DNA from: Mobula hypostoma
Taxonomy: Eukaryota
Length of the DNA stretch: 64,000 bases
Direction of reading: 5' to 3'
Assembly (NCBI RefSeq): GCF_963921235.1
Contig: NC_086128.1
Coordinates: 4,464,001-4,528,000 of the forward strand
Below are positions 345-61,584 of the stretch, one piece after another. Position 1 is the stretch's first letter, and each line of letters starts with the position of its first letter. The notes under the pieces are model-generated. The model saw only the letters and a program-made list of their open reading frames with translations. It was not told the origin of the DNA and ran no database searches. The translations under genes were made by a program, and so were the position numbers.

Positions 345-484
345 CAGGAATTTTCACTGTTACTGTTTCCGGAATCTCCCGTTTTCGCATTCAGAGCGGA
401 AATGAGGAAACGATCACTGACAGTTTTCCTTTCAGAACACCTGACGCCCATTTTCAGTTTTCGAATGTAATAGCACACATAAAA
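345..484 (+). promoter_or_regulatory. Gene A promoter: CATAAAA box, IRF and NF-kB-like sites
   Basis: CATAAAA 478-484. On the opposite strand: TTACATTCGAAAACTGAAAA (451-470), GAAAGGAAAACTG (421-433), and the kB-consensus GGGAGATTCC (371-380) adjoining GCGAAAAC. Confidence 0.7.
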
Positions 485-668
485 TTCGGCAGTATGGCAG
501 AGAGAGCTCACAACACGATCCCCAGATACAGGACTCGGCAGCACCGGCGTCCGCTCCCGGATCACAAGCCGCGGCGTTTCTATATCCCGAGTTCCAGTCG
601 GCGAACAAGACCGGTTTTCGGAGCTGATTCTAGTCTCATATCGGTGCTTTATTCTGTGTCGGGTGAAG

Positions 669-3092
669 ATGGCATTGGGCCGTGTTTGGAGAGTTTGCAG
701 TGTGTGGCTGTTTTTGACCGGGACCCTGACCCTGGGCAGTGAGAAGTTACAGTTACTGCAAATTCTGAACACAAAGACTCTGGGCAAACTGGATGAAATG
801 GTGAGTTGAACCTGCGCCCAGAAACCGCTCCTGACAGTCCCTGGCTCTTTGATTTAAATCTCAGAAAAGGCGCTATAGTTTGAGAGCTTTGTCGTTCTAC
901 ATGCCTGATTCCCCGCGTTACTGTGATATTTCGGTGTTGGATTGTCTATAACAAAGTTTACTTTCTCCCTCCCAGGGCGCTGCCTTTCCCTGGCAGTGTG
1001 TAAGTGAGAGGCTGTCGCTAAAAACCCAGCCCTTGAAGCTAGTGAATCTTTCGAAGGGGTTGACGGTGAGTGGTTGGACTTTATTTCATTCAGTTGCAGA
1101 GCGCATTATTTTGGTACTTCATCATCTATCATTGTGACTTCGTGTTGCCGAAACGTGGATGTGAAAAGGAGTGTAGTATGTACTCCTTTCTCGGATGTCA
1201 GTGACTGAGAAAACAACTTCCCACCGACACTGGCTCGTCTAGCGGAACCTTTAAGACCAGAAAACCATAAAATATAGGAGCAGAATTTGGCCATTCGACC
1301 CATCGAATCTGCTCCACCATTTCATCCTGGCCGATCCATTTTTCCTCTCAGCCCCAATCTCCTGCCTTCTCCCTGTATCCCTTCATGCCCTAACCAATCG
1401 AACTCTGCCTTAAATATACATGAAGATTTGGCCTCCACAACTGCTTGTGGCAAAGAACTCCACAGACTCACCACTCAATGGCTAAAGAAATTCCTCCTCA
1501 TCTCGTTCTAAAAGGAGACCGCTCTATTCTGAATCTGTGTCCTCGAGTTTAGTTTTAGATAGTCTCCCAAATAGGAAATGTCCTCTCCATCAAGACGTTT
1601 CACACGATTCAATTAAGTCACTGCTCATTCTTCTAAATTCAAACTTTTTTCATGTGACAAGCTGTTTAATCCTGGAATCATCTTCGTCAACCTCCTTTGA
1701 ACCCTTTCCAGTTTCATCACTCCCTGTCTAAGAAAAGGTGTCCAAATGAGGTCTAAAGAGCAGGCAGTAGATGATGTTCAGAATTTCAAAAGTGCATGAT
1801 GAAATAACTGTTCGATAAGGTGAAGAAAACGATATTGGATTAAAATATCAGCAAGGAACGAGGACTGGCTAAAAGACAGAGAACATAGAACTAAAAAAAA
1901 TGAACATCCATGTCGTCAGGCTATTAATAATAAGGGGTTCCGTATTGTGAACAGAGTAGCTGACCCATGTTAAAAAGGTCATTAACGAATTAGATGGAAA
2001 TAAGAAGTGCAATATACTGTATGTCCAAGTTTGTTGCTGATAATAAGGCGCAAAGGGTAAGGGCAGCGTGAGGACGGGTAGGTTGGAGAATTATGTGGGA
2101 AACTGTGATTGTGCAGTTTGCTGTGAATCTGCGTTTTTAGAGTATAAATTGAATAGTTCAAAATTGGAAAGTGTCGAAGTACAGAGTGTTCATAGTGTGC
2201 ATAATGATTCTATCTGACCGCAGTAAATGATGTCAATGAAAACGTGAGTGGTCTGATTAGTATGTTTGCATATAACGCAATTATTGGTAGTGGAGTTATG
2301 GATAGTGAGGAAAGCTGTCAAAGAATGCAACAAGATGTAAATCAATTGGAAATTTGGGCAGAAATATGGCATGTAAAGTTTAATCCAGTTAACCATGATG
2401 TGGTACACGAGGAAAGATGGACCTTAGGGGCATTCATGTACAAAGCGATCTTAGGGTGCAAATCCACAGCTCACTGAAAGTGTTGACATAAGTGGTAAAG
2501 AAGCTTTCCTGCTATGACTATAGGAAGGACGCAAAGACTTAAGGGAGGATTTGGAGAAGTTCACTGAGATGTCTGGATTGGAGAATGCTGCTGAACCAGA
2601 TTGCTAGCAAGACTGCTGTAATGACACCTTGTGTTCTTTGCACAGACCCAAGAGAAGATCCATATTGTTTGTCAAACACTGCGGCAAACCAACGAGATCT
2701 ACGGCATGAGTTTAGGTTCAGCCACATGGCCCCTCAAAAAGGTGGAAGGCTTCAGGGTTCTCCTGCATCGGCAAGTCAGAGTGCTGGAGGAATGCGTGTG
2801 GAATCCAGCCACAGAGTCTCGGCCAAAGGGAACCATCATAATTGAAAAATACTTTCGAAAATTGCGAAGCTTTCTTAAACATAAGGTGAGCTGGTAGCTG
2901 TTATACTCTGTCATTAATTAGCGATATTGCATTTCACCCAGTTTCTGTATGCGCAACCCATAATTTGCTCTCCTGAATATTTTCTTTTTCCAGAAGTTTG
3001 CCGAATGTGCCTGGGAAATTATCCGTACTGAAACGAGAGCCTGTTTACAGCAGATCCTCCTCATCGCAGCAAAAACTAGCAGAAAATACTGA
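669..3092 (+). CDS. Type I interferon gene A (divergent member), 4 exons, 186 aa
   Basis: Exons 669-800 (MALGRVWRVCSVWLFLTGTLTLGSEKLQLLQILNTKTLGKLDEM), 976-1065 (GAAFPWQCVSERLSLKTQPLKLVNLSKGLT), 2646-2885 (TQEKIHIVCQ...KYFRKLRSFLKHK), 2994-3092 (KFAECAWEIIRTETRACLQQILLIAAKTSRKY*). All introns GT-AG, phase 0. Hydrophobic signal peptide; KYF..L..FL and CAWE..R motifs of type I IFN. Confidence 0.93.
1255..2600. mobile_element. Decayed CR1 LINE fragments in intron 2 of gene A
   Basis: Minus-strand CR1 3' end (~1255-1750) and plus-strand RT remnants (SMFAYNAIIG...QLEIWAEIWHVKFNP, resembling SKFADD...WQMQFN). Confidence 0.65.
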
Positions 3093-3251
3093 ATAATTTT
3101 AAAGGTGCGGCCAGCACTGGAAAAGAAGAATGGACGTTCCTTTCAAAGAGAAGCATTTTATATATAACATCTTCAGCTGGAAGTGACTTGAGTAGAGGAT
3201 GTGTCTTTATATACTTCCACATTTACTACCTATTTAATGACCATAAATATA

Positions 3252-9658: not shown

Positions 9659-12600
9659 TCAGTGACCTCTGCTGATTTTTGCCATAATGAGAAGGTGCTG
9701 TTGTAGATGTGCTCTGGTCTCAGCGCGGGTTATTTCCCAGGCACAGGCAGTGAATCTCTGAAAGAGAGAAAATGAAATACGTTATATAATAAACCAATAT
9801 CAAGTGTTTGAAATAATGTGCTGGTGATCAAGTGTTAATTCACCTTCTGTTTCAGAAACTCTCTCAGTACATGAAAGTATTTAAGAATTGCGGCATTCTT
9901 CCTTGGTTTGGACTCTGAGCCTGGTTTCCGGACACAATCTTCCAGCTCTTTGAGCTGCCGATCCAAGAGAAGCCTGAAGTGTTCCACTGAGCTCTGGACC
10001 CACGTGACTGAGCTCAGGTTCAAACTGTAGATCCTGCGGAGGTGATGCAGGGTCTGATGGACAATCCAGATCCTTTCCTGTGCCTGTGCAAAACACACGT
10101 GGTGATATTAGTAGGGCCATGGTTCTAGTAAAGTTGAGATTTAGAACAGAATGCTTATAACTCTCAGTAGAATAGGACAAGACAAAATCAGTCATTAACT
10201 TCAAACAAACAGACCTTAACTAAGGGACTGCTAACTTCAGTGAATTTATCAAAGTGCAGAGCCATGTCAACTGCAGCCTACAGTTAATAGTTTAAACAGC
10301 GAAAGGAGAATTTCCTATTAGTAAGGCCTCAGGTGCAGGAGAGACTGCTCGAGTCCTTGACAGGTTGCAAAACTGATTTGCACGAATACATTAATGCTGC
10401 AGGGACTTTCAGTTACAGAGTGAGTCCAGAGAAATTTGGGCTGATCTCCTCAAGACACAGACAGTGAGGGAGAGATTTTCGAGACATGTCCAATCTCATG
10501 AAGAGATTGAAATTCTTAGAGGAATGAAAAACAGGTGAAGGAAGAACAGGAAAGGAGGAAATAAGAAGGGGAGTTTAGCTATATGACAAAAGGTTTGCCA
10601 TGTCAAGAGCCTGATGTACACTGACCATTGCATATTTTTAAAAGAAGTAGAGTGCATCAGCTATTACAACCTTCAGACTTTGGGTGGAGACAAATGAAAG
10701 TGTTACAGAAGCAGTTCCTTTAGCTTCCCCCAACCTCCAATTTTTCTGAACCTCCTTTGAACCCTCTCCAGTTCCAGCACATCCTTTCTCAGAAAAGGGG
10801 CCCAAAACTGCTCACAATATTCCGAATGAGGCCTTACCAGTGCTTTATAATGTTTCAGCATTACATCCTTGCTTTTATATTCAAGTCCACTTGAAATGAA
10901 TGCTGACATTATATTTGCCTGAGCCCGCAAATTAAACTTTAGGGAATCCTGCACAAGGACTCCCAAGTCTCTTTACTTCTCAGTTTTTTGTATTTTCTCC
11001 CCATTTAGCAAAGAGTCAACCCTTTCATTTCTTCTACCAAAGTGCATGAACTACACTTTCTGACACTGTATTCCATCTGCCATTTCTTTGCCCACTCTCC
11101 TAATCTGTCAAAGTCCCTCTGCAGCCTCCCTATTTCCTCAAAACTTCCTGCCCCTCCACCTTCATATTGCCTGCAAACTTTGCAATAAGGCCATCAATTC
11201 CATCATCTAAATTATTGATATATAATGTAAAAAGAATCGGTCCCAACACAGACCCCTGTGGAACACCACTAGTCACCGGCAGCCAACCAGAAAAGGCTCC
11301 CTTTATTCCCAGTCTTTGCCTCCTGCCAATCAGTCACTGTGTTATCCATGCCAGAATCTTTCCTGCTATACCATGGGCCCACAGCTTGTTAAGCCAGCCT
11401 CATGTGTGGCACCTTGTTAAAGGCCTTTTGAAAATCCAAGTACACCACATCAACCAATTCACCTTTGTCCATCCTGCTTTTTAATTCAAAAAATTATAAC
11501 AGGTTTATCAGGCAAGATTTTCCCTTGAGAAAATCATGCTGATTATAGCAAGTACCCTGAGACCTCATCTTTTATAATCAACTCCAACATCCTCCCAGGC
11601 ACTGAGGTCAGACTAACTGACCTGTAGTTTCCTTTCTTCTGCCTCTCACCCTTCTTGAAGAGTGGAGTGGCATTTGCAATTTTCTAGTTTTCCAGAACCA
11701 TTTGAGAATCTAGTGATTCTTGAAAGATCATTATAATGCCTCCATTATCTCTTCAGCCACCTCTTTCAGAACTCTGGGGTGTATACCATCTGGCCCAGGT
11801 GACGTATCTACCTTTAGACCTTTCAGTTTCCCAAGAACCTTCTCTCTAGTTATGGTAACTTCACACAATTAATGCCTCCAGCTACCTGCAACTTCCACCA
11901 TACTGCTGCTGTTTTCCTTAGTAAAGACTGATGCAAAATACTTATTCAGTTCATCTGCCATTTCCTTGTTCCCCATTACTATCCCTCCAGCATCGTTTTC
12001 CAGTGGTCCGATATCTCTCCTGTCTGTCTTTTACACTTTATATATCTGAAGAAACTTTTGATATCCTCTTTAATATTATTGGCCAGCTTACTTTTTTATT
12101 CCATCGTTACCTTCTTAATGACTTTATAGTTCCCTTCTGTTAGTTTTTTAAAGGTTCCCAATCCCCTAACTTCCCACCAATCTTTACTCAATTATATGCC
12201 CTCTCTTTGGCTTTTATGTTGGCTTTGAGTTCACTTCTTTTGCCACAGTTGTGTCATCTTTCCTTTAGAATACTACTTCCTTTTTGAGATGTATATATCC
12301 TCGGCCTTCCAAATTGCTTCCAGAAATTCCAACCATTGCTGCTCTGCTGTCATCCCTGCCAGTGTTCTTTTCCAATCAATTTTGGCCAACTCCTCCCTCA
12401 TGCCTCTGTAATTCCCTATACTCCACTGTAATGCCGATATCAGAGGTGTAAAGGGACGAGGGAGTCTTTGTGCAGCATTCCCTAAAGGTTAGCTTGCAGG
12501 TTGAGTCGTGGTGAGGAAGGCAAATGCAATGTTAGTATTCATTTCGAGAGGACTAGAATATCAAACAAAGATGTAATGCTGAGGCTTTATAAGGTGCTGG

Positions 12601-14480
12601 TGAAGCCTCACTTGGAATATTATAAGCAGTTTTGGGCCCCTTATTTAAGAAAGGATGTGCTGACATTGGAGAGGGTTCAAAGGATGTTCATGAAAATGAC
12701 CCCGGAAATGAAAAGGTTAATATATGAGGTGTATTTGATGGCTCTGGGCCTGTACTTGCTGGGATTTAAAAAGATGGGTGGGTGGGGAGTCTCATTGAAA
12801 CCTACTGAACATTGAAAGATCTGGATAGTGAATTTTATCATATTATGATCACTTTCCCTGATAGGCTCTCTTACCTTGAGCTCTCTAATCAATTCTGGTT
12901 CTTTGCAAAACACCCTATCCAGAATAACTGATACTCTAGTCTGCCCAACCACGAGCTGCTCTGAAAAACCATCTCGTAGGCACTCTAGAAATCCTACCTC
13001 CTGTAACCTGACACCAACCTGATTTTCCCAAACTACCTGTATATTGAAGTCCCCCCAAGACTGCTGTAACATTGCCCTTTTGGCTTTCATTTTCTATCTT
13101 CCATTGTAACTTGGAGGCAACATCCTAACTACTGTTTGGGCATCTGTACAGAAGTTCCATCAGGGACTTTTTACCCTTGCAGTTCCACACTCTATCCACA
13201 GTGGTTCAACACCTTCTGACCCTAGGCCACCTCTTTCTAATGAGTATTTTCTGAGTATGCCATCAAGTAAACAAATCTCAGGGTTGTATATCGTGAAATA
13301 TATCAATTTTGATAATAAATTCACTTGAACTTTGAACAGATATCGTGAGAGTTTCTGTCTTAAGATGTTTGTTCCAAATTCCATCCATGCATTGTGGATT
13401 TTTTTCCTGCTATCGCATCCTGTACTCCAAAGTTTTGCATTAAATCTGTAACATTGGTCATATACATTTCTTCGATTTGGAAAGTTTATAGATGCCTACA
13501 ATCATAGAACCACGCATGATATGGCACACCAGTGTCAGGTCTCCCCTCAGCTTTTATCTCCTCGATACCAAAGGGTCAGCTATAATGTAAAATAATTTAA
13601 CGAGAAACCTCACGATTTTTCAGTGCATTTAAAGTGAAGTAGGTGGTTCCATCACCAATGAAGCACGTAGGTAGTGTGATGATCTGAGAGGATGCAAGCA
13701 TTTCCTGAGATCAACAGAACTCGTAATGTCACTGTAGGGTGCGGGAGAGATATTTAGAGAGAGGAACACAGAGAGAGGGAGAGGAAAAACTAGCAGAAAG
13801 TGATACAGGGTGACATGTTTATTGGTGACAGAGCATGTGAAATGATTAGATTAGATGATGGGAGGGAGTTATATACAGAGAGGGAGCTAACCGTGAGTGG
13901 GATAGAGAGAAAGGGGGCAGCAGTGTGATAACTGAAATGAGATCTATTCCGTGTGAATGGGGTCCTGAAAGTCCGAGTGATAGAGTCAGAAAATGAGTGT
14001 GACATGGAGAGAAAGAATTCATATTCTGATATAGTCAAATTATCTGGGTAAAGTTCGGATCCGATCCTTCACATTACTTAGCATAATATCTCCAATGAAT
14101 TACATTAAAGTAAAATCCAGAGTTTACTCACATGAACCTGCTCCGAAAGTTTCACCAGGTCCAGAGGCTTGGTTTTCAACGACAGCCTCTCAGTCGCACA
14201 CTGTCGGGGGAGGCGGCCACCCTGAGACAGAAGATACCAACGTTACTGATAATCCCACCACACAGAAACACCGGGAGAACAGACTATTTGTTAACAACGA
14301 ACAGCCAGGGACTGTCAGGACCCGTCTCTGGGAGTGGGTTCAACTCACCATTTCATTCAGTTTGCCCAGAGTCTCTGTGTTGAGAACTTGCAGTAACCGC
14401 AGCCTCTCACAGCCCAGGGTCAGGGTCACGGTCAAAAACAGCCACACACTGCAAACTCTCCAAACTCGGCCCAATGCCAT
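9659..14480 (-). CDS. Type I interferon gene B, 4 exons, 186 aa
   Basis: Exons 14349-14480 (MALGRVWRVCSVWLFLTVTLTLGCERLRLLQVLNTETLGKLNEM), 14132-14221 (GGRLPRQCATERLSLKTKPLDLVKLSEQVH), 9844-10083 (AQERIW...KYFHVLREFLKQK), 9659-9757 (RFTACAWEITRAETRAHLQQHLLIMAKISRGH*). GT-AG phase-0 introns; 4 mature cysteines; NLS glycosylation sequon. Confidence 0.94.
10745..13245. mobile_element. Decayed CR1 fragments in intron 2 of gene B (mirrored at ~57781-60281 in G)
   Basis: RT and endonuclease peptides (YKALVRPHSEYCEQFWAP; GDFNIQVVW...FLECLRDGF) on both strands, frameshifted. Confidence 0.85.
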
Positions 14481-15665: not shown

Positions 15666-15666
<1 letters not shown>

Positions 15667-15700: not shown

Positions 15701-15705
<5 letters not shown>

Positions 15706-46166: not shown

Positions 46167-46908
46167 ACAGCAGGTGCCTCTTGCAATAGTAACGAGAGGG
46201 AAGGTAAGGTTTTCTTTTCCCAGTTTACGTTGTACCTCACTCTGGCAGTGGAGGAGGTCCCCGTAGCACGAATGAGAGTGGGGTTGAGAATTACAGCGGT
46301 TTCAAACCCTTCAATCTGTAGTTTTATTTGATCATTTACAAACACGTTCAATTTCGGAAGTGACGAAACCCCCTTTTCTTGCCTCGGGTTACTTTCGCTT
46401 TTCTTCCAGTTGCAAACGGAGACGGAGTCTTTCCTGGGAGCAGCGGCAAGAAAGAAAAGCGATCGGGGTCTGGATCGCCATCCGACTCAGTGTCCAAGTG
46501 GTTCGATTTAAACGAGAAACCGAAATGTCTTATTTAAATACAGACTACAAACACACTCTGTGCTTAGAGAGCACGGTCACGGACTGGAGTACTCGCGCAG
46601 TGAGAGTCGCAGTGGCCTTGGCTTTCTGCGCTGACCACCCTGCGATGTGGTTTCATTGGAACTGGGTGAGTGCTAGGTGCGAATTTAACAGAATCTGTTT
46701 GTGGCTCCGAAGATCAGCTCTGAAACGCGCAGTGTAACTGTAACCCTGATAAAAATGCAGCCCCCATCGAGGCACGAACACAGTCACGTCCGCAAACCCA
46801 CCCTCGTTCCCTGCTAAAGCTGACCCACCCTCCACAACCCTTTTGACCCCCCGATCTGAACGACGCAAAAAATCCACAGCCTGGGCGCTGCTTGTTCTCT
46901 CCGGTGGC

Positions 46909-47055
46909 GGATTTTCCCGTCGTTGCTGCGGGACTCTCCCGCTTTCAGATTCCTTACTTCAGAGCGAAGGTCGCTCTCTCCCGACGCATTCCCAAATATC
47001 CCGCAGTCATTTCACTTTTCGAATGTCACCCATTTTCGGATTTTAACATATAAAA
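46909..47055 (+). promoter_or_regulatory. Gene F promoter (divergent partner of E)
   Basis: GGATTTTCCC, GGGACTCTCCC, TTTCACTTTTC, ATGTCA and TATAAAA; mirror image of the E promoter (coordinate sum 92165). Confidence 0.8.
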
Positions 47056-47239
47056 TCCGGCAGTATGGCAGAGAGAGCTCAGAGCACGATCCCCAGACAC
47101 AGGACTCGGCAGCACCGGCGTCCGCTCCCGGATCACAAGCCGCGGCGTTTCTATATCCCGAGTTCCAGTCGGCGAACAAGACCGGTTTTCGGAGCTGATT
47201 CTAGTCTCATATCGGTGCTTTATTCTGTGTCGGGTGAAG

Positions 47240-50200
47240 ATGGCATTGGGCCGAGTTTGGAGAGTTTGCAGTGTGTGGCTGTTTTTGACCGTGACCCTGA
47301 CCCTGGGCTGTGAGAGGCTGCGGTTACTGCAAGTTCTCAACACAGAGACTCTGGGCAAACTGAATGAAATGGTGAGTTGAACCCACTCCCAGAGACGGGT
47401 CCTGACAGTCCCGGGTGTTCATTGTTAACAATCAGGTGATTACAAATAGTCTGTTCTCCCGGTGTTTCTGTGTGGTGGGATTATCAGTAACGTTGATATC
47501 TTCTGTCTCAGGGTGGCCGCCTCCCCCGACAGTGTGCGACTGAGAGGCTGTCGTTGAAAACCAAGCCCCTGGACCTGGTGAAACTTTCGGCGGAGGTTCA
47601 TGTGAGTAAACTCTGGATTTTACTTTAACGTAATTTATTCGAGGCATTTGTGCAATGCTAAGAACCTGACCTGAAATTTAACAGGTGAACAAACTATTAC
47701 AGAATGTCAATGCTTTTTCTCCATGTCATTGGCTTTTTCTGTCACTCTGGCTCGGATTCTAAAGAAAACATTCAAAGGGAATATATCTGACAGCGGCTTT
47801 CACACCCTGTCGATCTCCTCCTGTGTTCCACTCACTGGCGGTCCACACTCTGTCTCTAACATCCTCTCCTCATCTCACATACTCTAACACGAAACATGCT
47901 GCTCTCTGTGACCGTCTGCTTGCTACTGTCACTCCCCCTCCCTGCACTTTCTGGTCACTCTGTCTGATGATCTCAACTACCCATTGAATTTATCCCTTCT
48001 GACCATCTGCTGCAAATCTTCTTATCCCCTCAAAATCTCCTCAAAGCATCACACAACCTGTGTCCACCATGGGTGATGAAATCAACTGCACTATCCCAAT
48101 AATCCAACACCTGATTTTAAGTGTCTCCTCCGACCTAGTTAAGTGATTCTTCATCTTAGCTGGCCCATTGGGATCAAGGAGGCGAGGGTTTTGTGTGTGT
48201 GTGTGGGGGGGGGGGCGGGATAGGGGTGTATCAAATTATGAGTGGTGGAATTAGAATGTACTGCATTATTCTTCCCCACAGCTGAGGTGTCTACATTGAT
48301 TTAAGACAAAAAAGTAAGAGGTTTGGATGGGATATTAGGAAAATATTCCTCCAGGGTATACTTGAAATTTGGAACCCAGCATCTGAAAAGATATTGAGGG
48401 CAGAAATTTTCACAACATTTAAGGAGTATCTACTGTATATGATTGCTTCAATTGCCAAGGCTACTGAGCAGCTATTGGTGAATGGAGCATGAGAACAATG
48501 CAGCACAGTACATGCACGATGTCTATTCTAATATCAATCTAACCCTTCCCTCCCTCATAGTTCTCCATTTTTTCTTTCTTCCATATCTCTATCTAACAGT
48601 CTCTGAAATGTCCCAAATGTATTTGCGTCGACCACCACCCTGGCAGGGCGTTCTATGCATCCACTATTCTCTGTGTAAAAGACCTACCTCTGACACTGCC
48701 CCCCCCCCATACATTCCTCCGAACACCTCAAAGTTATGCCCCTTGTATTAGCTATTTTTATCCTGGGAAAAAGTCTCTGTTGCACACTCTACCTTTGCCT
48801 GTTATCATCTTGTACACCTCTATCAAGTCACCTCTCGTCCTCCTTCTCTCCAAAGAGAAAAGCCCAAATTATCCTCATGAGATATGCCCTCTAATCTGAT
48901 CAGCATCATGGTAAATCTCCTCTGCACCCTCTCTAAAGCCATGTACTTCCTATATTGAAGTGAACAAAACTGAGCACAATACTCCAAATGTGGTCTAACC
49001 AGAGCTTTATAGAAGAGTTATAGAACTGCAACATTACCTCACAGCACTTAAACTCAATCCTATGAGTAACTCCATATGCCTTCTTAATCACCCTGTCAAC
49101 TTCCATAGCAACTTTAAGGGACCTATGAACATGGACTTCAAGATCCCGCTTTTCCTCCACTTAAGATCCCTGCCATTAACTCTGTATTCTGCCTTCAATT
49201 TTGACCTTCCAAAGCGAAACACTTGATACTTTTCTAGATTGAACATCATCTGCCATTTTTCAGCCCAGCTCTGCATTCCATGAATGTCCCATTGTAACCC
49301 AAATCAATCTTCTATTCTATGCATAACAACATCAATCTTTGTGTTATCTGCAAACTTACTAACTCTCCCTTCCGCTTCCTGATCTAAGTCATTTAAAAAT
49401 ATTACAAAGGGAAGGGTCTCAGAAAAGATTTTTGCAAACACCACGAGAGACAGACTTCCAGGCAGAATGTGTTCCATCTGCTACCACCTTCTGCCTTCTG
49501 TGGGCAAGCCAACTCTGAATCCACTTAGCCAAGTTTCCTTGAACTCAATGCCTCTTTACTTTTTGAATGAGCTTACCATGGGGAACCTTGTCAACTGCCT
49601 TACTAAAATCCATACATACAACATCCACTCTTCTGCCTTGGGGATTTCCTTAATTCGACTTGTGATAGCCTTTTCATGTCCAGTTCTAGCTCTTGTAAGT
49701 CCATTCATTAGCTGCTGCCTGGCTACTAGCAGATGAGATGGGCCAAATGGTCTAATTATGCTCCTATGTGCTATAGCCTACCTTGTAACTCTCAAGAGTC
49801 TGATCCTTCCTTACTAAATTTTAGGTACGTTTCTTTCTTCCTCTAAACTAGATGTTCCACTTCTCTTGTCAACCATGATTCCTTCACCCTACCATCCTTT
49901 CCTTGCCTGAATGGGGCAAACCTATCCAGAATCACATGCAAGTACTACAGCCTTCACATTTCCATTGTGCATTTCTCTGAGTGCATCTGTTCCCAATTTA
50001 TGCTCTCAAGTTTCTACCTAATAGCATCATAATTGACCTGCCCCCAATTAAATAATTTACAATACTGTCAGCTCCTATCCTTCTAAAAGGCTATGGTAAA
50101 GGTGTGGGAGTTGTAGTCACTGTCTCCAAAATGCTCATCTAAAAAAGATATGTCACCTGACCACGTTCATTGGCTAGAACCAGGCCTAATATGACCTCTC

Positions 50201-51892
50201 CTCTAGTTGGCCTGTCTGCATACTGTGTCAGGAATCCTTCCAGGACAGACCCAACATGCTCTGTCCCATCTAAACTTTTTGCACTGAAGAGCTGACAATC
50301 AATTTTAGAGAACTTGAAGTCACCAATGACAACAACCCTGTATCTTTCCAAAATCTGCCTCCCAATCTGCTGCTCAGTGTATTGGATGATGTTGGGGGGA
50401 TCTACAGAAATCTTTCAATAGAGTGACTGCTTCCTTGCTGTTTCTGACTTCCATCAACACTGACTCCATAGACGATCCCTCCAGGACGTCCTGCCTTTTT
50501 GCAGCTATGATATCATCCCTGATTAGCAATGCCACTCCCCCACCTCTTTTACCTCTCTCCCTGTCCCTTTTGAAAAATCTAAACCCCAGAAACTGCAGCA
50601 AAAAATTCCTGCCCTTGTGACAAATCCTCTGACCTATCAATCTGCTTTTGTATCACTCTGAATGAGATTTCTTTAGGTGGCTGCTTGATGGGTGGTATGG
50701 ACTGAGAGGACTCGAGCAGCTTTTTTTCTGTGACTCTTACTTGCCCCTACTCAAGTTCTGAAGTGTAGAAGATGATCTGCTTATCTTAAAAATGTGTGAT
50801 GGCCATTGGGCATCAGGTACCACAGGGTGCAGACACAGGGGACCTCAGCTCACATTACAAGACACCCCTAAAAAGTTCCTACTCCCATAGTCACCTGTCA
50901 TCTATTCCCCTAACCACTTCACTGACGTTCCAATTCCTTGGGCTAACATAATTACCATGCAACTGTTTATGTCATTGTCTTTATAAGTTACTGTTTAATC
51001 TTTTTAACAACCCATTCAGACAACTGTCTGTCTCACCTCCATGATTCTCCCCTTTATGAGATTGCAGATCTTTATAAAATCTCCCCCTCACTATTTCTGG
51101 TGAAAGGAGAGCAGACTAAATTCCTCTGGTCTCTGTGTAACTAACATCCTGTGGCATTGATGCCATTCCCTCATTCAGTCAAGCATCTTGTCATTCTTCA
51201 TCTAAGTCCTTATTTGTGGTTCATTGCTCATTCCCTGTTGAAACCTCTAACTGTACACTGCAATTGACAACGATGTGACCTTCAATTCACAGTTGTTAGT
51301 AGCCCTCCGTTTGAGGTCTGTATATTTTAAGTTGATGTTTGATTTTGTCTTGTACTAAGACTCATAAATGTTTTGTTCTAATTCTAAACGTTTGTGAGAC
51401 CACGACCCTACTAATGTCACCATGTGTGTTTTGCACAGGCACAGGAAAGGATCTGGATTGTCCATCAGACCCTGCATCACCTCCGCAGGATCTACAGTTT
51501 GAACCTGAGCTCAGTCACGTGGGTCCAGAGCTCAGTGGAACACTTCAGGCATCTCTTGGATCGGCAGCTCAAAGAGCTGGATGTCTGTGTCCGGAAACCA
51601 GGCTCAGAGTCCAAACCAAGGAAGAATGCCGCAATTCTTAAATACTTTCAGAAATTGAGAGAGTTTTTGAAACAGAAGGTGAATTGATATTAAAACATGT
51701 GCCTGCCAATACATTTATTTATCTACTTTATACTTGTTCATGATCTAATTTTTCACTATTGAGTACATTTGCCTTTTTCTTCCTCCCTTTTAGGGATTCA
51801 GCAACTGTGCCTGGGAGGTAACCCGCACTGAGACCACCATGCATTTAAAACAGCTCCTTCTCATTATGGCAAAAATCAGCAGAGATCACTGA
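47240..51892 (+). CDS. Type I interferon gene F, 4 exons, 186 aa
   Basis: Exons 47240-47371, 47512-47601 (GGRLPRQCATERLSLKTKPLDLVKLSAEVH), 51439-51678 (AQERIW...FRHLLD...KYFQKLREFLKQK), 51794-51892 (GFSNCAWEVTRTETTMHLKQLLLIMAKISRDH*). GT-AG phase 0. Confidence 0.94.
48490..50630 (-). mobile_element. Decayed CR1 fragments in intron 2 of gene F
   Basis: RDRERGKRGGGVALLIR, VVIGDFKF and WAEKWQMMFNLEK remnants. Confidence 0.8.
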
Positions 51893-54112: not shown

Positions 54113-54179
54113 AGAGAGTATATCGAGTTAGGAAAGAGGCTGAGGAGAAGCGCATCCAAGGTAGTGCAGGTAGGAATGG

Positions 54180-54835: not shown

Positions 54836-56160
54836 TAAGCTTACAGTAACATAAATTCTACACAATTTACAAAATAAGAAAAGTAAACATAAACACACAT
54901 GTAAGTTGTGCAAGTTAATCCAGGGTCGCGTTAAGGTATTTCAGTTCGTTACGGGACCCCGATACAGTGGAGAAGAAGCTGCTGAAGAACTTTGAGATGT
55001 GAGTCTTGAAGCTCCTCTAGTTTCTGCCGAGTGGGAACATTTATTGCTTTCCTGAGACATTATCTCCTGTCGATGTCATTTATGGTGTGGAGAGCTGCAC
55101 TAGTGATGAAACTGGATGAGTATACTACACTCTGCAGCCTCTTGAATTCCTGTGCATTGAGTTTCCATACGAAGCCCCGATGTAACCCGTCAGAACGCTT
55201 TCTACCGTACATCTGTAGAAGTTTGGCAGAGTATTCGATGACATATTGAATCACCTTAAACTAAGAAAATAGGGATGCTGGAGTATATTCTTCATTGTTG
55301 CATCCAGAAGCGGTCGAGTGTGTTGAGTCCTTTGATGTTACCGGTGACATGCTGGCAGTAGTTCGGCAGAGGATTCTTCAAGTTAAACTAGTTGAAGTGC
55401 CCTTCGATGCTGAGGAAGGCATTGGTGAGGCCAGTTAATCATGGAGCTCAATCCCTCCAGTGCTAGTTTGACATCTGCCTGGGGTGGGAATGTACTTCAA
55501 CCAGTGTAACATCAGAGAACTCCCCCGCTAGATAATAATGTAAACCATACGAACGAGATAGAACCTCCTGCTCCCAGCACTCCAGCAGTTAGTCAGGAAG
55601 CAAAAGTCATCGCCTCCGCAGTTTCACTTACGCTCCATTCCTGTTGATAAACACGCCCACTTCGGAAGTGACGACCCCGTCACCTTTACCCTGGGACACT
55701 TTCGTTTCGGGTGAATTTGCCGCGAAGCCACTTCCCACCGGCAAGCTAAGCTGGAGACTAACCCGCAGCAGCGGCAGACAGAGCAGGCATCGGAATCGCC
55801 TTTCGATCCGGAGACGAAGAAGAATTGAAAGAAACGCCGAAGTGTCTTCTGTAAAGAACCCGGACACCATACTACCTTCATAGCGAGCACAGTCATAGAC
55901 AGGTGTATCCGCGCAGAGTCGCTACCAAAATGATGTGCTCGGGCTCTGTACACTGACCACCCTGCGATATGGCACCACTGGCGTTGAATTTAACAGAATC
56001 TCTGTCTGTGGATCCGAAGATCAGCGCTGAAAGGCGCAGGGTTACTGTCACCGTGATCAAATGCAGCCCTCACGGATGCACCGACACAGTCACGTCCTCA
56101 CCCCACCCCCGTCCCTTGCCAAACCTGACCCACCCTCCACAACACCTCGGACCACCCGAT

Positions 56161-59100
56161 CTGAACGAACGCATGAAGTCCGGAGCCTGGACACTGCTTG
56201 TTCTCTCCGGTGGCGGATTTTCCCGTCGTTGCTGCGGGACTCTCCCGCTTTCAGATTCCTTCCTTCGGAGCGGAGGTCGCTCTCTCCCGACGCGTTCCCA
56301 AATATCCCGCACTCATTTCACTTTTCGAATGTCACCCATTTTCGGATTTTAACATATAAAATCCGGCAGTATGGCAGAGAGAGCTCAGAGCACGATCCCC
56401 AGACACAGGACTCGGCAGCACCGGCGTCCGCTCCCGGATCACAAGCCGCGGCGTTTCTATATCCTGAGTTCCAGTCGGCGAACAAGACCGGTTTTCGGAG
56501 CTGATTCTAGTCTCATATCGGTGCTTTATTCTGTGTCGGGTGAAGATGGCATTGGGCCGAGTTTGGAGAGTTTGCAGTGTGTGGCTGTTTTTGACCGTGA
56601 CCCTGACCCTGGGCTGTGAGAGGCTGCGGTTACTGCAAGTTCTCAACACAGAGACTCTGGGCAAACTGAATGAAATGGTGAGTTGAACCCACTCCCAGAG
56701 ACGGGTCCTGACAGTCCCTGGCTGTTCGTTGTTAACAAATAGTCTGTTCTCCCGGTGTTTCTGTGTGGTGGGATTATCAGTAACGTTGGTATCTTCTGTC
56801 TCAGGGTGGCCGCCTCCCCCGACAGTGTGCGACTGAGAGGCTGTCGTTGAAAACCAAGCCTCTGGACCTGGTGAAACTTTCGGAGCAGGTTCATGTGAGT
56901 AAACTCTGGATTTTACTTTAATGTAATTCATTGGAGATATTATGCTAAGTAATGTGAAGGATCGGATCCGAACTTTACCCAGATAATTTGACTATATCAG
57001 AATATGAATTCTTTCTCTCCATGTCACACTCATTTTCTGACTCTATCACTCGGACTTTCAGGACCCCATTCACACGGAATAGATCTCATTTCAGTTATCA
57101 CACTGCTGCCCCCTTTCTCTCTATCCCACTCACGGTTAGCTCCCTCTCTGTATATAACTCCCTCCCATCATCTAATCTAATCATTTCACATGCTCTGTCA
57201 CCAATAAACATGTCACCCTGTATCACTTTCTGCTAGTTTTTCCTCTCCCTCTCTCTGTGTTCCTCTCTCTAAATATCTCTCCCGCACCCTACAGTGACAT
57301 TACGAGTTCTGTTGATCTCAGGAAATGCTTGCATCCTCTCAGATCATCACACTACCTACGTGCTTCATTGGTGATGGAACCACCTACTTCACTTTAAATG
57401 CACTGAAAAATCGTGAGGTTTCTCGTTAAATTATTTTACATTATAGCTGACCCTTTGGTATCGAGGAGATAAAAGCTGAGGGGAGACCTGACACTGGTGT
57501 GCCATATCATGCGTGGTTCTATGATTGTAGGCATCTATAAACTTTCCAAATCGAAGAAATGTATATGACCAATGTTACAGATTTAATGCAAAACTTTGGA
57601 GTACAGGATGCGATAGCAGGAAAAAAATCCACAATGCATGGATGGAATTTGGAACAAACATCTTAAGACAGAAACTCTCACGATATCTGTTCAAAGTTCA
57701 AGTGAATTTATTATCAAAATTGATATATTTCACGATATACAACCCTGAGATTTGTTTACTTGATGGCATACTCAGAAAATACTCATTAGAAAGAGGTGGC
57801 CTAGGGTCAGAAGGTGTTGAACCACTGTGGATAGAGTGTGGAACTGCAAGGGTAAAAAGTCCCTGATGGAACTTCTGTACAGATGCCCAAACAGTAGTTA
57901 GGATGTTGCCTCCAAGTTACAATGGAAGATAGAAAATGAAAGCCAAAAGGGCAATGTTACAGCAGTCTTGGGGGGACTTCAATATACAGGTAGTTTGGGA
58001 AAATCAGGTTGGTGTCAGGTTACAGGAGGTAGGATTTCTAGAGTGCCTACGAGATGGTTTTTCAGAGCAGCTCGTGGTTGGGCAGACTAGAGTATCAGTT
58101 ATTCTGGATAGGGTGTTTTGCAAAGAACCAGAATTGATTAGAGAGCTCAAGGTAAGAGAGCCTATCAGGGAAAGTGATCATAATATGATAAAATTCACTA
58201 TCCAGATCTTTCAATGTTCAGTAGGTTTCAATGAGACTCCCCACCCACCCATCTTTTTAAATCCCAGCAAGTACAGGCCCAGAGCCATCAAATACACCTC
58301 ATATATTAACCTTTTCATTTCCGGGGTCATTTTCATGAACATCCTTTGAACCCTCTCCAATGTCAGCACATCCTTTCTTAAATAAGGGGCCCAAAACTGC
58401 TTATAATATTCCAAGTGAGGCTTCACCAGCACCTTATAAAGCCTCAGCATTACATCTTTGTTTGATATTCTAGTCCTCTCGAAATGAATACTAACATTGC
58501 ATTTGCCTTCCTCACCACGACTCAACCTGCAAGCTAACCTTTAGGGAATGCTGCACAAAGACTCCCTCGTCCCTTTACACCTCTGATATCGGCATTACAG
58601 TGGAGTATAGGGAATTACAGAGGCATGAGGGAGGAGTTGGCCAAAATTGATTGGAAAAGAACACTGGCAGGGATGACAGCAGAGCAGCAATGGTTGGAAT
58701 TTCTGGAAGCAATTTGGAAGGCCGAGGATATATACATCTCAAAAAGGAAGTAGTATTCTAAAGGAAAGATGACACAACTGTGGCAAAAGAAGTGAACTCA
58801 AAGCCAACATAAAAGCCAAAGAGAGGGCATATAATTGAGTAAAGATTGGTGGGAAGTTAGGGGATTGGGAACCTTTAAAAAACTAACAGAAGGGAACTAT
58901 AAAGTCATTAAGAAGGTAACGATGGAATAAAAAAGTAAGCTGGCCAATAATATTAAAGAGGATATCAAAAGTTTCTTCAGATATATAAAGTGTAAAAGAC
59001 AGACAGGAGAGATATCGGACCACTGGAAAACGATGCTGGAGGGATAGTAATGGGGAACAAGGAAATGGCAGATGAACTGAATAAGTATTTTGCATCAGTC

Positions 59101-61329
59101 TTTACTAAGGAAAACAGCAGCAGTATGGTGGAAGTTGCAGGTAGCTGGAGGCATTAATTGTGTGAAGTTACCATAACTAGAGAGAAGGTTCTTGGGAAAC
59201 TGAAAGGTCTAAAGGTAGATACGTCACCTGGGCCAGATGGTATACACCCCAGAGTTCTGAAAGAGGTGGCTGAAGAGATAATGGAGGCATTATAATGATC
59301 TTTCAAGAATCACTAGATTCTCAAATGGTTCTGGAAAACTAGAAAATTGCAAATGCCACTCCACTCTTCAAGAAGGGTGAGAGGCAGAAGAAAGGAAACT
59401 ACAGGTCAGTTAGTCTGACCTCAGTGCCTGGGAGGATGTTGGAGTTGATTATAAAAGATGAGGTCTCAGGGTACTTGCTATAATCAGCATGATTTTCTCA
59501 AGGGAAAATCTTGCCTGATAAACCTGTTATAATTTTTTGAATTAAAAAGCAGGATGGACAAAGGTGAATTGGTTGATGTGGTGTACTTGGATTTTCAAAA
59601 GGCCTTTAACAAGGTGCCACACATGAGGCTGGCTTAACAAGCTGTGGGCCCATGGTATAGCAGGAAAGATTCTGGCATGGATAACACAGTGACTGATTGG
59701 CAGGAGGCAAAGACTGGGAATAAAGGGAGCCTTTTCTGGTTGGCTGCCGGTGACTAGTGGTGTTCCACAGGGGTCTGTGTTGGGACCGATTCTTTTTACA
59801 TTATATATCAATAATTTAGATGATGGAATTGATGGCCTTATTGCAAAGTTTGCAGGCAATATGAAGGTGGAGGGGCAGGAAGTTTTGAGGAAATAGGGAG
59901 GCTGCAGAGGGACTTTGACAGATTAGGAGAGTGGGCAAAGAAATGGCAGATGGAATACAGTGTCAGAAAGTGTAGTTCATGCACTTTGGTAGAAGAAATG
60001 AAAGGGTTGACTCTTTGCTAAATGGGGAGAAAATACAAAAAACTGAGAAGTAAAGAGACTTGGGAGTCCTTGTGCAGGATTCCCTAAAGTTTAATTTGCG
60101 GGCTCAGGCAAATATAATGTCAGCATTCATTTCAAGTGGACTTGAATATAAAAGCAAGGATGTAATGCTGAAACATTATAAAGCACTGGTAAGGCCTCAT
60201 TCGGAATATTGTGAGCAGTTTTGGGCCCCTTTTCTGAGAAAGGATGTGCTGGAACTGGAGAGGGTTCAAAGGAGGTTCAGAAAAATTGGAGGTTGGGGGA
60301 AGCTAAAGGAACTGCTTCTGTAACACTTTCATTTGTCTCCACCCAAAGTCTGAAGGTTGTAATAGCTGATGCACTCTACTTCTTTTAAAAATATGCAATG
60401 GTCAGTGTACATCAGGCTCTTGACATGGCAAACCTTTTGTCATATAGCTAAACTCCCCTTCTTATTTCCTCCTTTCCTGTTCTTCCTTCACCTGTTTTTC
60501 ATTCCTCTAAGAATTTCAATCTCTTCATGAGATTGGACATGTCTCGAAAATCTCTCCCTCACTGTCTGTGTCTTGAGGAGATCAGCCCAAATTTCTCTGG
60601 ACTCACTCTGTAACTGAAAGTCCCTGCAGCATTAATGTATTCGTGCAAATCAGTTTTGCAACCTGTCAAGGACTCGAGCAGTCTCTCCTGCACCTGAGGC
60701 CTTACTAATAGGAAATTCTCCTTTCGCTGTTTAAACTATTAACTGTAGGCTGCAGTTGACATGGCTCTGCACTTTGATAAATTCACTGAAGTTAGCAGTC
60801 CCTTAGTTAAGGTCTGTTTGTTTGAAGTTAATGACTGATTTTGTCTTGTCCTATTCTACTGAGAGTTATAAGCATTCTGTTCTAAATCTCAACTTTACTA
60901 GAACCATGGCCCTACTAATATCACCACGTGTGTTTTGCACAGGCACAGGAAAGGATCTGGATTGTCCATCAGACCCTGCATCACCTCCGCAGGATCTACA
61001 GTTTGAACCTGAGCTCAGTCACGTGGGTCCAGAGCTCAGTGGAACACTTCAGGCTTCTCTTGGATCGGCAGCTCAAAGAGCTGGAAGATTGTGTCCGGAA
61101 ACCAGGCTCAGAGTCCAAACCAAGGAAGAATGCCGCAATTCTTAAATACTTTCATGTACTGAGAGAGTTTCTGAAACAGAAGGTGAATTAACACTTGATC
61201 ACCAGCACATTATTTCAAACACTTGATATTGGTTTATTATATAACGTATTTCATTTTCTCTCTTTCAGAGATTCACTGCCTGTGCCTGGGAAATAACCCG
61301 CGCTGAGACCAGAGCACATCTACAACAGC
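56161..61329. repeat. Right arm of ~5.17 kb inverted duplication (partner 9697-14865)
   Basis: As above; includes the same decayed CR1 fragments in intron 2. Confidence 0.93.
56215..56361 (+). promoter_or_regulatory. Gene G promoter (inverted copy of B)
   Basis: Mirror image of the B promoter (coordinate sum 71026). Confidence 0.8.
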
Positions 61330-61367
61330 TCCTTCTCATTATGGCAAAGATAAACTCAGGACTCTGA
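56546..61367 (+). CDS. Type I interferon gene G, 4 exons, 186 aa (near-identical to B except C-terminus)
   Basis: Exons 56546-56677, 56805-56894, 60943-61182, 61269-61367 (RFTACAWEITRAETRAHLQQLLLIMAKINSGL*). ATTTA-rich 3' flank and AATAAA at 61528-61533. Confidence 0.94.
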
Positions 61368-61584
61368 AAGCTTTCCTGTTATATGGAGACATGCCATTAT
61401 TTATTTTTAAAAGTTGTTTTCTGTGTTAATGGTATCCCAAAATTTTGTAACCTTATTGTTATTTATTGAAGTATATACATTTTATAGTGATTTTTATACT
61501 GTTCTTTTTTATGAAGATGAGAGTCTAAATAAATTGTATCCAAAATTACACTGTTTATTTATGTTGGCTGATTTCCCTTACTCA

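What the first reader, a model, noticed from the sequence alone, without database searches (positions are those of the whole stretch)
345..61533. Cluster of 4-exon type I interferon genes (6 intact, 1 truncated, 1 relic) hidden from the ORF track
Seen: seven loci in the order A(+) B(-) C(-) D(-) E(-) F(+) G(+), with exon sizes 132/90/240/99 nt (E: 132/81/240/138) and phase-0 introns. Known: teleost and amphibian intron-containing type I IFNs have 5 exons and amniote ones are intronless. Inference: the 240-nt exon 3 is a fusion of ancestral exons 3 and 4, and this is a lineage-specific expansion in a cartilaginous fish, parallel to the mammalian IFN-alpha cluster.
Basis: partly seen in the sequence, partly recalled or inferred. 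Interest (0 to 1): 0.7.

Follow-up and report, generated by a model that had tools for sequence, protein, structure and literature searches.

The report
Devil ray type I interferon cluster
The window holds a real cluster of six intact and one broken antiviral type I interferon genes of a devil ray, but public annotation already lists them and their four-exon layout was published in 2017, so this is a correct but ordinary finding.

Summary
Seven loci lie in the order A(+) B(-) C(-) D(-) E(-) F(+) G(+). Their coding exons are 132/90/240/99 nt (E: 132/81/240/138), all GT-AG and all phase 0. Six genes are intact. C keeps only exons 3-4, and an orphan promoter with 5'UTR lies at 25857-26403.

They are type I interferons: Pfam PF00143 scores 94 bits, and the 41 best PDB fold matches are all type I IFNs. 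The window comes from Mobula hypostoma. My models of B, D, E, F and G are identical to RefSeq proteins; RefSeq's model of A skips exon 2.

Assembled contigs from public runs (RNA status guessed) carry the intron 2 and intron 3 junctions of D and run unbroken through the 240-nt exon. A bowfin IFN gene has an intron (exons 150+105 nt) exactly where the ray exon is continuous. This supports loss of intron 3, which Secombes & Zou (2017) already published for cartilaginous fish.

New details:
- Exons 1-3 are homogenised among B-G (exon 3 is 95-97% identical against 65-80% in flanking sequence), while exon 4 keeps orthology with Hypanus. The copies are therefore older than they look.
- B and G share a 5.4-kb inverted tract at 99.3% identity.
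- An upstream alternative first exon bypasses the signal-peptide exon.

The parts
669..3092 (+). Gene A, intact, 186 aa. Exons 669-800, 976-1065, 2646-2885, 2994-3092. Divergent paralogue: exon 3 is 50% identical to B-G.
   Evidence: RefSeq model P0087 (156 aa) omits exon 2. Exon 2 is conserved in the Hypanus P0050 C-terminal half, 93% over 142 columns.
9659..14480 (-). Gene B, intact, 186 aa. Exons 14480-14349, 14221-14132, 10083-9844, 9757-9659. Intron 2 (4 kb) carries retroelement fragments.
   Evidence: Identical to RefSeq P0107 / XP_062893734.1.
17825..18247 (-). Locus C, truncated. Only exon 3 (18247-18008) and exon 4 (17923-17825) remain, with open frame and intact splice sites. Exons 1-2 are absent.
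   Evidence: Homology to the other genes ends about 30-90 nt upstream of exon 3.
18883..24737 (.). Two LINE-type retroelements lie where C's exons 1-2 should be. One is on the minus strand: endonuclease ORF 21157-21498 and 751-aa RT ORF 18883-21138. The other is on the plus strand: RT ORF 23154-24737.
   Evidence: Pfam RVT_1 at 1e-33 and 2e-26, Exo_endo_phos_2 at 4e-7.
25857..26403 (-). Relic: a promoter plus 5'UTR copy that keeps the TATA box but loses homology about 30 nt before the ATG. No exon 1 is present. It is probably the orphaned 5' end of C.
   Evidence: blastn 75.6% over 586 nt; alignment A1.
28089..30863 (-). Gene D, intact, 186 aa. Exons 30863-30732, 30591-30502, 28527-28288, 28187-28089.
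   Evidence: Identical to RefSeq P0006 / XP_062893862.1. Public-run contigs join 28187|28288 in 4 runs and 28527|30502 in 2 runs, and cross exon 3 unbroken.
31430..31457 (-). 3' end of a distal alternative first exon of D. In public-run contigs it is joined directly to exon 2. It is out of frame with exon 2 by +2 nt.
   Evidence: Loose ends located (2 mismatches); sequence.
41186..44925 (-). Gene E, intact, 196 aa. Exons 44925-44794, 44652-44572 (81 nt), 41667-41428, 41323-41186 (138 nt, giving a C-terminal extension).
   Evidence: Identical to RefSeq P0109 / XP_062893948.1. The extension is shared with M. birostris P0002 and Hypanus P0012.
46525..46665 (+). Distal alternative first exon of F, with donor GTGAGT after 46665. 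The start is uncertain. An ISRE-like GAAACCGAAA and a TATTTAAATA box lie at about 46515-46540. The ATG of MWFHWNW is in frame with exon 2.
   Evidence: RefSeq isoform X1 P0005. The same N-terminus occurs in M. birostris P0112 and Hypanus P0111.
47240..51892 (+). Gene F, intact, 186 aa. Exons 47240-47371, 47512-47601, 51439-51678, 51794-51892. It lies head-to-head with E.
   Evidence: Identical to RefSeq P0106 / XP_062893759.1.
56546..61367 (+). Gene G, intact, 186 aa. Exons 56546-56677, 56805-56894, 60943-61182, 61269-61367.
   Evidence: Identical to RefSeq P0105 / XP_062893863.1.
55989..61348 (.). 5.36-kb tract that is the inverted near-copy (99.27%) of 9678-15033, the B locus. The tract ends inside exon 4, so B and G keep different C-termini.
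   Evidence: Self-megablast. B and G each have their own M. birostris orthologue by exon 4: P0108 at 97% and P0003 at 100%.
46940..47239 (+). Proximal promoter and 5'UTR of F; equivalents lie upstream of exon 1 in A, B, D, E and G. It carries NF-kB-like GGGACTCTCC at -310, a PRDI-like element (reverse complement GAAAAGTGAAA) at about -235, and TATAAAA at -191 from the ATG.
   Evidence: Alignment A1; motif scan. Motif level only; function is inferred.

Best explanation
This is a tandem and inverted cluster of intron-containing type I interferon genes on a 73-Mb chromosome of the lesser devil ray, Mobula hypostoma.

Each intact gene (A, B, D, E, F, G) encodes a precursor of about 186 aa. It has a 23-residue leader and a mature helical cytokine with four cysteines at mature positions 1, 29, 101 and 136. 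The inferred pathway follows from the family. Viral sensing activates IRF3/7 and NF-kB on the conserved TATA promoter. The secreted protein binds the IFNAR1/IFNAR2-type receptor pair and drives JAK-STAT induction of antiviral genes.

The four-exon layout is the standard cartilaginous-fish layout, produced by loss of ancestral intron 3. The array grew by duplication within batoids. A is an old paralogue shared with stingrays and skates, and B-G belong to a stingray-plus-manta clade. Gene conversion has since homogenised promoter, exons 1-2 and exon 3 among B-G, while exon 4 keeps each paralogue's identity. A recent 5.4-kb inverted conversion made B and G nearly identical. C was disabled when LINE insertions or a rearrangement removed its exons 1-2.

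Shown here: gene structures, family membership, fold, intron 2 and 3 junctions in public-run contigs, and the phylogenetic pattern. Inferred: inducibility, secretion, receptor use and antiviral activity.
For: Gene models and splice sites. Identity to five RefSeq M. hypostoma proteins.

Family membership: PF00143 at 94.3 bits on D, and 82 bits on M. birostris P0002 (E's orthologue) and on F isoform X1 P0005. PDB sequence hits are only type I IFNs, best 7wkh grass carp IFNa at 4e-17, with the mature N-terminus aligning at C24. The AF2 model has pLDDT 86.5 and pTM 0.80. Foldseek ranks 1-41 are all type I IFNs, TM up to 0.86.

Public-run contigs: intron 3 joint in 4 runs from 2 studies, intron 2 joint in 2 runs, both CT..AC on the plus strand (GT..AG on the minus strand), and exon 3 is contiguous.

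Intron-3 loss: bowfin exons 87/150/105/93 against ray 90/240/99, with the break after the conserved Cys. Literature: PMC5332411.

Tree: B-G with M. birostris and Hypanus form a clade at 99/98. A pairs with Hypanus at 100/99 and then with skates at 96/98. All batoid sequences form a clade at 98/96.

Concerted evolution: dS in exons 1-3 is 0-0.10 among B-G, against 0.24-0.71 in exon 4 between the different paralogue types (lower only for the related B, C and G). Exon 3 is 95-97% identical at nucleotide level against 65-80% for flanking intron, exon 4 and downstream sequence. Exon 4 groups F with Hypanus P0008 (91%, SH-aLRT 96) and E with Hypanus P0012 (71%, SH-aLRT 90). Exons 1-3 group all Mobula copies together (SH-aLRT 90).

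Promoter motifs.
Against: No contig joins exon 1 to exon 2. The contigs that reach exon 2 from the 5' side come from a distal alternative exon instead, so the secreted-form mRNA is supported only by homology and RefSeq models. The runs are assembled contigs of unstated library type from unstimulated samples, so induction by virus is not shown. Promoter elements are motif matches only. Exon 4 is only 32 codons, so its dS values and tree rest on few sites. Gene conversion is inferred from within-window nucleotide comparisons and cross-species protein comparisons, not from cross-species DNA. A lacks the first cysteine and has an extra one, so its disulfide pattern is uncertain.
Confidence: 0.9

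Rival explanations
1. The copies B-G arose by a recent burst of duplication confined to Mobula, and their similarity reflects young age rather than gene conversion.
For: Exons 1-3 differ by dS of only 0-0.10 among B-G. In the full-length tree the Mobula copies sit close together.
Against: Each of B, D, E, F and G has its own 1:1 M. birostris orthologue. F's exon 4 is 91% identical to Hypanus P0008 but only 56-69% to its Mobula paralogues. E shares its C-terminal extension with Hypanus P0012. The exon 4 tree and the exons 1-3 tree disagree. Sequence flanking exon 3 is only 65-80% identical.
Confidence: 0.07
2. The B/G pair is an assembly artefact (a haplotype or mis-joined inverted duplicate), so the cluster really has five intact genes.
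For: 5.36 kb at 99.27% identity in inverted orientation, including intronic retroelements.
Against: There are about 39 differences across the tract. The tract ends inside exon 4, and beyond it the two loci differ. B's C-terminus (ISRGH) matches M. birostris P0108 and G's (INSGL) matches P0003, so two separate genes exist in a second species. RefSeq annotates both.
Confidence: 0.06
3. The genes belong to the type III interferon (lambda) or IL-10 branch of class II cytokines rather than type I.
For: That branch also has phase-0 introns and a helical-bundle fold.
Against: The only Pfam family above threshold is PF00143. All 20 PDB sequence hits and the top 41 fold hits are type I IFNs. IL-22 first appears at E 0.23 with TM 0.31.
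Confidence: 0.01
4. The array is largely decaying pseudogenes that are transcribed only as non-coding RNA from the distal exon.
For: The only 5' junction seen in contigs skips the signal-peptide exon and is out of frame in D. C is truncated.
Against: There are six full open frames with intact splice sites. dN/dS is below 1 in exons 1-3. All four Cys are retained in B, D, E, F and G. Orthologues are conserved in two further species. Interferons are normally silent without stimulation, so missing exon 1 junctions are expected.
Confidence: 0.04

Closest known systems
Cartilaginous-fish intron-containing type I interferons (elephant shark and catshark IFN1; Venkatesh 2014, Secombes & Zou 2017 PMC5332411, Redmond 2019 PMC6640115)
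   Same: Same family (PF00143). Same 4-exon/3-intron layout with intron 3 lost. Multi-copy tandem loci. About 186-aa precursors in many sharks and rays. Four-cysteine pattern.
   Different: This is a manta/devil-ray locus not described in the papers I could search. It shows a batoid-specific subfamily structure (A type, P0074 type, B-G type), exon-limited homogenisation and an inverted 5.4-kb conversion.
Teleost and holostean type I IFNs (grass carp IFNa 7wkh, zebrafish IFNphi1 3piv, bowfin 'interferon a3-like' P0037)
   Same: Best sequence and fold matches. Phase-0 introns at the same positions for the exon 2/3 and last-exon boundaries.
   Different: Bony-fish genes have 5 coding exons; the ray lacks the intron after the conserved Cys. 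Grass carp IFNa is a 2-Cys form, whereas the ray genes B-G have 4 Cys.
Mammalian IFN-alpha gene cluster
   Same: Many closely similar paralogues in both orientations. Gene conversion among copies is documented (e.g. PMC3244034, PMC2680415). Pseudogenes lie within the array. Cysteines sit at roughly the same mature positions: 1, 29, about 99 and about 139.
   Different: Mammalian genes are intronless retrocopies at a different locus. The ray genes keep three introns, and conversion tracts appear to stop before the last exon.
Rainbow trout intracellular IFN isoforms (Chang et al. 2013, PMC3828176)
   Same: Alternative 5' exon usage gives transcripts that lack the signal-peptide exon.
   Different: In the ray the alternative exon also removes most of helix A. 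It is in frame only in the F type and out of frame in D. No protein or activity evidence exists.

Membership tests
Type I interferon (Pfam PF00143, Interferon alpha/beta domain) | Sequence match above the curated gathering score | tested here: met
   D (P0006) scores 94.3 bits against a cutoff of 26.8. M. birostris P0002 (E's orthologue) scores 82.2, F isoform X1 82.1 and A's RefSeq model 70.1. Exon 3 alone scores 36-49 bits.
Type I interferon (Pfam PF00143, Interferon alpha/beta domain) | Long-chain helical-bundle fold closest to solved type I IFN structures | tested here: met
   AF2 model pLDDT 86.5, pTM 0.80. Foldseek PDB ranks 1-41 are all type I IFNs: 7wkh TM 0.86, 3piv 0.80, human IFN-beta 0.80.
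Type I interferon (Pfam PF00143, Interferon alpha/beta domain) | Conserved cysteines for the C1-C3 and C2-C4 disulfides | tested here: met
   B, D, F and G have Cys at mature positions 1, 29, 101 and 136; E has them at 1, 29, 98 and 133. A lacks C1 and has extra Cys. C24, C124 and C159 are at least 90% conserved in 40 homologues. The bonds themselves were not verified.
Type I interferon (Pfam PF00143, Interferon alpha/beta domain) | N-terminal secretion signal | tested here: inconclusive
   A hydrophobic 23-residue leader is present. The mature N-terminus of grass carp IFNa aligns at G23/C24. The leader forms a low-confidence helix in the model. No signal-peptide predictor was available.
Type I interferon (Pfam PF00143, Interferon alpha/beta domain) | Virus/IRF-inducible promoter | tested here: inconclusive
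   A conserved TATA box (-191), a PRDI-like GAAAAGTGAAA and an NF-kB consensus (-310) are present in B, D, E, F and G. These are motif matches only, with no induction data.
Type I interferon (Pfam PF00143, Interferon alpha/beta domain) | Signals through IFNAR1/IFNAR2 and induces an antiviral state | not testable with these tools
   Needs recombinant protein and ray or shark cells.
Cartilaginous-fish 4-exon IFN1 gene organisation | Four coding exons, three phase-0 introns | tested here: met
   Five models are identical to RefSeq proteins. Introns 2 and 3 are seen as joints in public-run contigs. Intron 1 is not seen spliced.
Cartilaginous-fish 4-exon IFN1 gene organisation | Ancestral intron 3 absent (exons 3+4 fused) | tested here: met
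   Bowfin has exon 3 of 150 nt and exon 4 of 105 nt, split after the conserved Cys. The ray has a single 240-nt exon (150+90). Contigs run contiguously across it. The literature statement is in PMC5332411.
Type III interferon / IL-10 family | Better sequence or fold match to IL-10, IL-22 or IFN-lambda than to type I IFN | tested here: not met
   No Pfam hit to those families even at E up to 10. No PDB sequence hit. IL-22 appears only at rank 50 with E 0.23.

The most novel reading that the evidence does not exclude
The F-type gene may make a second, signal-peptide-less interferon isoform from a distal promoter with its own ISRE-like element. The junction peptide (MWFHWNW joined to exon 2) is conserved in frame in Mobula hypostoma, M. 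birostris and Hypanus sabinus. If it were functional, intracellular interferon isoforms, so far shown only in trout, would predate the split of cartilaginous and bony fish. Separately, gene conversion that spares only the last exon would mean paralogue identity, and perhaps receptor tuning, is carried by the C-terminal helix alone.
Probability: 0.1. Interest if true: 0.55.

Novelty: already known. Interest (0 to 1): 0.27.

Why it matters
The finding confirms that a raw-sequence reader can reconstruct split cytokine genes to the base, but it adds little biology. The genes are already in RefSeq, and the four-exon layout with loss of intron 3 was published for cartilaginous fish in 2017.

The useful residue is practical:
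- A corrected model for gene A, since RefSeq drops a 30-codon exon that carries a conserved cysteine.
- A clear case of concerted evolution that makes old interferon paralogues look young. Anyone building interferon trees from full-length ray or shark sequences should account for this.
- A lead on alternative 5' exons that bypass the secretion signal.

Tried and rejected
(1) I looked for exons 1-2 of C between 18.3 and 25.8 kb with low-stringency tblastn and found none.

(2) I tried to fetch DNA of shark (P0016) and paddlefish (P0103) IFN genes to compare intron positions. The shark sample file was too large, and the paddlefish look-up was never sent because the service was full. Bowfin worked.

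(3) I tried to see flanking synteny. Only gene lists came back, without DNA. No gene is called within about 10 kb upstream of A or downstream of G, so the chromosomal neighbourhood (GH/CD79B-type or other locus) stays unknown.

(4) Evidence for the exon 1 to exon 2 junction: none in the four runs laid. A contig spanning intron 1 unspliced may be DNA or pre-mRNA. The runs' RNA status is a guess. The spliced joints show RNA-derived contigs, but depth cannot be interpreted.

(5) Positive selection: pairwise dN/dS stays below 1 except one B-C exon 4 value based on 4 changes, so I make no such claim.

(6) Intracellular isoform as a general feature: rejected for D, where the alternative exon is out of frame by 2 nt.

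(7) One script with repeated MAFFT calls timed out and was replaced by a pairwise aligner. The first sequencing-run search found the server busy.

Full report
**What is in the window.** The window has no gaps. A bacterial-style ORF list shows seven copies of an ~87-codon frame (128 in E, by read-through). Three of them were scanned (A, E, F) and each alone matches Pfam PF00143 (Interferon alpha/beta), at E 7e-13 to 7e-9. tblastn with the exon 3 and exon 4 peptides of one copy finds exactly seven exon 3/exon 4 pairs. A scan for ATG...GT frames finds six copies of a 132-nt first exon that begins MALGRVWRVCSVWLFL. A scan for AG...GT frames between exon 1 and exon 3 finds six second exons, 90 nt long or 81 nt in E.

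- A(+) 669-3092
- B(-) 14480-9659
- C(-) 18247-17825, exons 3-4 only
- D(-) 30863-28089
- E(-) 44925-41186
- F(+) 47240-51892
- G(+) 56546-61367

Exon sizes are 132/90/240/99 nt, and 132/81/240/138 nt in E. Every intron is GT-AG with a polypyrimidine tract and is phase 0. A promoter plus 5'UTR copy at 26403-25857(-) loses homology about 30 nt before the ATG and has no exon 1. No trace of exons 1-2 lies between it and C. That interval is occupied by two LINE-type elements with RT and endonuclease ORFs. So "six intact, one truncated, one relic" is correct, and the relic is most simply the orphaned 5' end of C.

**Whose genes these are.** A protein search returned near-identical RefSeq proteins from Mobula hypostoma and M. 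birostris, and relatives from many rays and sharks, all named interferon-like and many exactly 186 aa long. My spliced models of B, D, E, F and G are residue-for-residue identical to M. hypostoma XP_062893734.1, XP_062893862.1, XP_062893948.1, XP_062893759.1 and XP_062893863.1. Gene lists for assembly GCA_963921235.1 place the genes at offsets that match the window. The genes are therefore hidden only from a prokaryote-style ORF track. Public annotation already holds them.

The exception is A. RefSeq's model (P0087, 156 aa) joins exon 1 directly to exon 3. The skipped exon (976-1065) has canonical splice sites and carries the conserved second cysteine. It is also present in the Hypanus orthologue (93% identity over 142 columns). 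C is not annotated as a protein.

**Family membership.**
- Full-length D scores 94.3 bits on PF00143 against a cutoff of 26.8, and no IL-10 or IFN-lambda family appears even at E up to 10.
- All 20 PDB sequence hits are type I interferons. The best is grass carp IFNa (7wkh, 4e-17), whose mature N-terminus aligns at G23/C24 of the ray protein.
- An AlphaFold model built on 40 homologues has pLDDT 86.5 and pTM 0.80.
- Its 41 best Foldseek matches in the PDB are all type I interferons, with TM up to 0.86. IL-22 appears only at rank 50 with E 0.23.
- B, D, F and G carry cysteines at mature positions 1, 29, 101 and 136, the four-cysteine pattern. A lacks the first.

**Public-run contigs.** Four public runs from two studies hold spliced contigs over D. 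Their RNA status is only a guess in the run table, but the spliced joints indicate RNA-derived sequence. The joint 28187|28288 (intron 3, 100 nt) appears in all four runs. The joint 28527|30502 (intron 2, 1974 nt) appears in two. Both have CT..AC ends on the plus strand, which is GT..AG for the minus-strand gene. Contigs run through the whole 240-nt exon without a joint. This verifies the one structural feature that sets these genes apart from bony-fish interferons.

No contig joins exon 1 to exon 2. Instead, two contigs continue from exon 2 into sequence that maps to 31430-31457(-), about 570 nt upstream of exon 1.

**The exon fusion.** I fetched a bowfin (Amia ocellicauda) interferon gene. 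Its coding exons after the first are 87, 150, 105 and 93 nt, all GT-AG and phase 0. The exon 2/3 boundary and the last-exon boundary fall at the same alignment positions as in the ray. The bowfin's extra intron lies directly after the conserved cysteine (...EELEKC|MDV...). That corresponds to residue 50 of the ray's 80-residue exon 3 (...KELDVC|VRKP...). So 240 = 150 + 90 with the intron gone.

It is not new. [quoted passage not shown] Redmond et al. 2019 (PMC6640115) describe the shark IFN1 repertoire.

**History of the array.** A maximum-likelihood tree of 52 sequences gives three nested results:
- B-G, their M. birostris counterparts and two Hypanus sabinus genes form one clade (99/98).
- A pairs with a Hypanus gene (100/99) and then with skate genes (96/98).
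- All of these fall in a batoid-only clade (98/96), separate from shark genes.

The copies are older than they look, however. Among B-G, synonymous divergence is 0-0.10 in exons 1-3. In exon 4 it is 0.24-0.71 between the different paralogue types, and lower only among the related B, C and G. Exon 3 is 95-97% identical at nucleotide level, while the 150 nt before it, intron 3, exon 4 and the downstream sequence are only 54-82% identical (this excludes the B-C-G group, treated separately below).

Across species, F's exon 4 is 91% identical to Hypanus P0008 but only 56-69% to its Mobula paralogues. E shares its C-terminal extension with Hypanus P0012. In exons 1-3, every Mobula copy is closer to the other Mobula copies than to either Hypanus gene. 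Separate trees agree. Exons 1-3 give one Mobula clade (SH-aLRT 90). Exon 4 gives an F-type clade (96) and an E-type clade (90), each including Hypanus. This is the signature of gene conversion over promoter to exon 3, with the last exon escaping. Gene conversion is well documented in mammalian IFN-alpha clusters (papers listed). A's promoter and exon 1 also look converted: dS is 0.13 in exon 1 against 0.63-0.90 in exons 2-3.

The most recent event is a 5.36-kb inverted tract shared by B and G at 99.27% identity, which ends inside exon 4. B and G each have their own M. birostris orthologue by exon 4 (P0108 and P0003). Those two orthologues differ more from each other in exon 3 (89%) than B and G do (100%). 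This points to conversion after the two Mobula species split, rather than an assembly artefact.

**Promoters and the alternative first exon.** The 300 nt upstream of exon 1 are about 90% conserved among B, D, E, F and G. They hold TATAAAA at -191, a PRDI-like element (reverse complement GAAAAGTGAAA) just upstream of it, and GGGACTCTCC at -310. This fits an IRF/NF-kB-inducible gene, but these are motif matches only.

F has a distal first exon that ends at 46665 (donor GTGAGT), preceded by GAAACCGAAA and TATTTAAATA. Its ATG (MWFHWNW) is in frame with exon 2. RefSeq models the same isoform in M. hypostoma, M. birostris and Hypanus. In D the equivalent exon is the one actually seen spliced to exon 2 in contigs, but it is 2 nt longer and out of frame. 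These transcripts skip the signal peptide and most of helix A. They may be regulatory or non-coding. A trout-like intracellular interferon (PMC3828176) is possible only for the F type and is unproven.

**Verdict.** Both the genes (RefSeq) and the four-exon/intron-3-loss organisation (2017 review) are already known. The added value is a corrected model of A, the anatomy of the C pseudogene, exon-limited concerted evolution with a recent inverted conversion, and the alternative-exon lead.

Noticed in passing
window 46525-46665 (+) and 31430-31457 (-): Distal alternative first exons splice directly to exon 2 and so skip the signal-peptide exon. This is seen in contigs from 2 public runs for a D-like transcript. 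RefSeq models it as isoform X1 of the F type in three ray species. It is in frame in F and out of frame in D.
   Followed up: partly
window 976-1065 (+): RefSeq's model of gene A (XP 'interferon omega-1-like', 156 aa) omits this 90-nt exon. The exon has canonical splice sites, a conserved cysteine and a Hypanus counterpart.
   Followed up: yes
window 9678-15033 vs 55989-61348: A 5.36-kb inverted repeat at 99.27% identity covers almost all of genes B and G, including intronic retroelements, and ends inside exon 4. It is probably a recent gene conversion between loci about 46 kb apart.
   Followed up: partly
window 18883-21498 (-): A LINE-type element has a long open RT frame (751 aa) and an adjacent endonuclease frame. 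A second RT frame of 527 aa lies at 23154-24737 (+). Such long open frames suggest recently active elements.
   Followed up: partly
window 30146-30197: This short intronic segment of D is covered by many unrelated contigs with loose ends on both sides in all runs. It is presumably a widely transcribed repeat fragment.
   Followed up: no
proteins P0050 (Hypanus sabinus, 296 aa) and P0001 (Leucoraja erinacea, 209 aa): These public gene models of other rays fuse two neighbouring interferon genes or repeat exon 3. This suggests automated annotation errors in similar tandem clusters. The Hypanus fusion implies a P0074-type gene lies directly upstream of the A-type gene there.
   Followed up: no
window 62264-63235 (+): A 323-aa open frame has no Pfam hit but contains a YIDD-like motif and lies next to other repeat-like frames. 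It is probably another retroelement fragment beyond the end of the cluster.
   Followed up: no
same chromosome, outside the window (P0098, P0028): M. hypostoma has at least two further, more divergent type I interferon genes on the same 73-Mb chromosome. They belong to other subfamilies in the tree.
   Followed up: no
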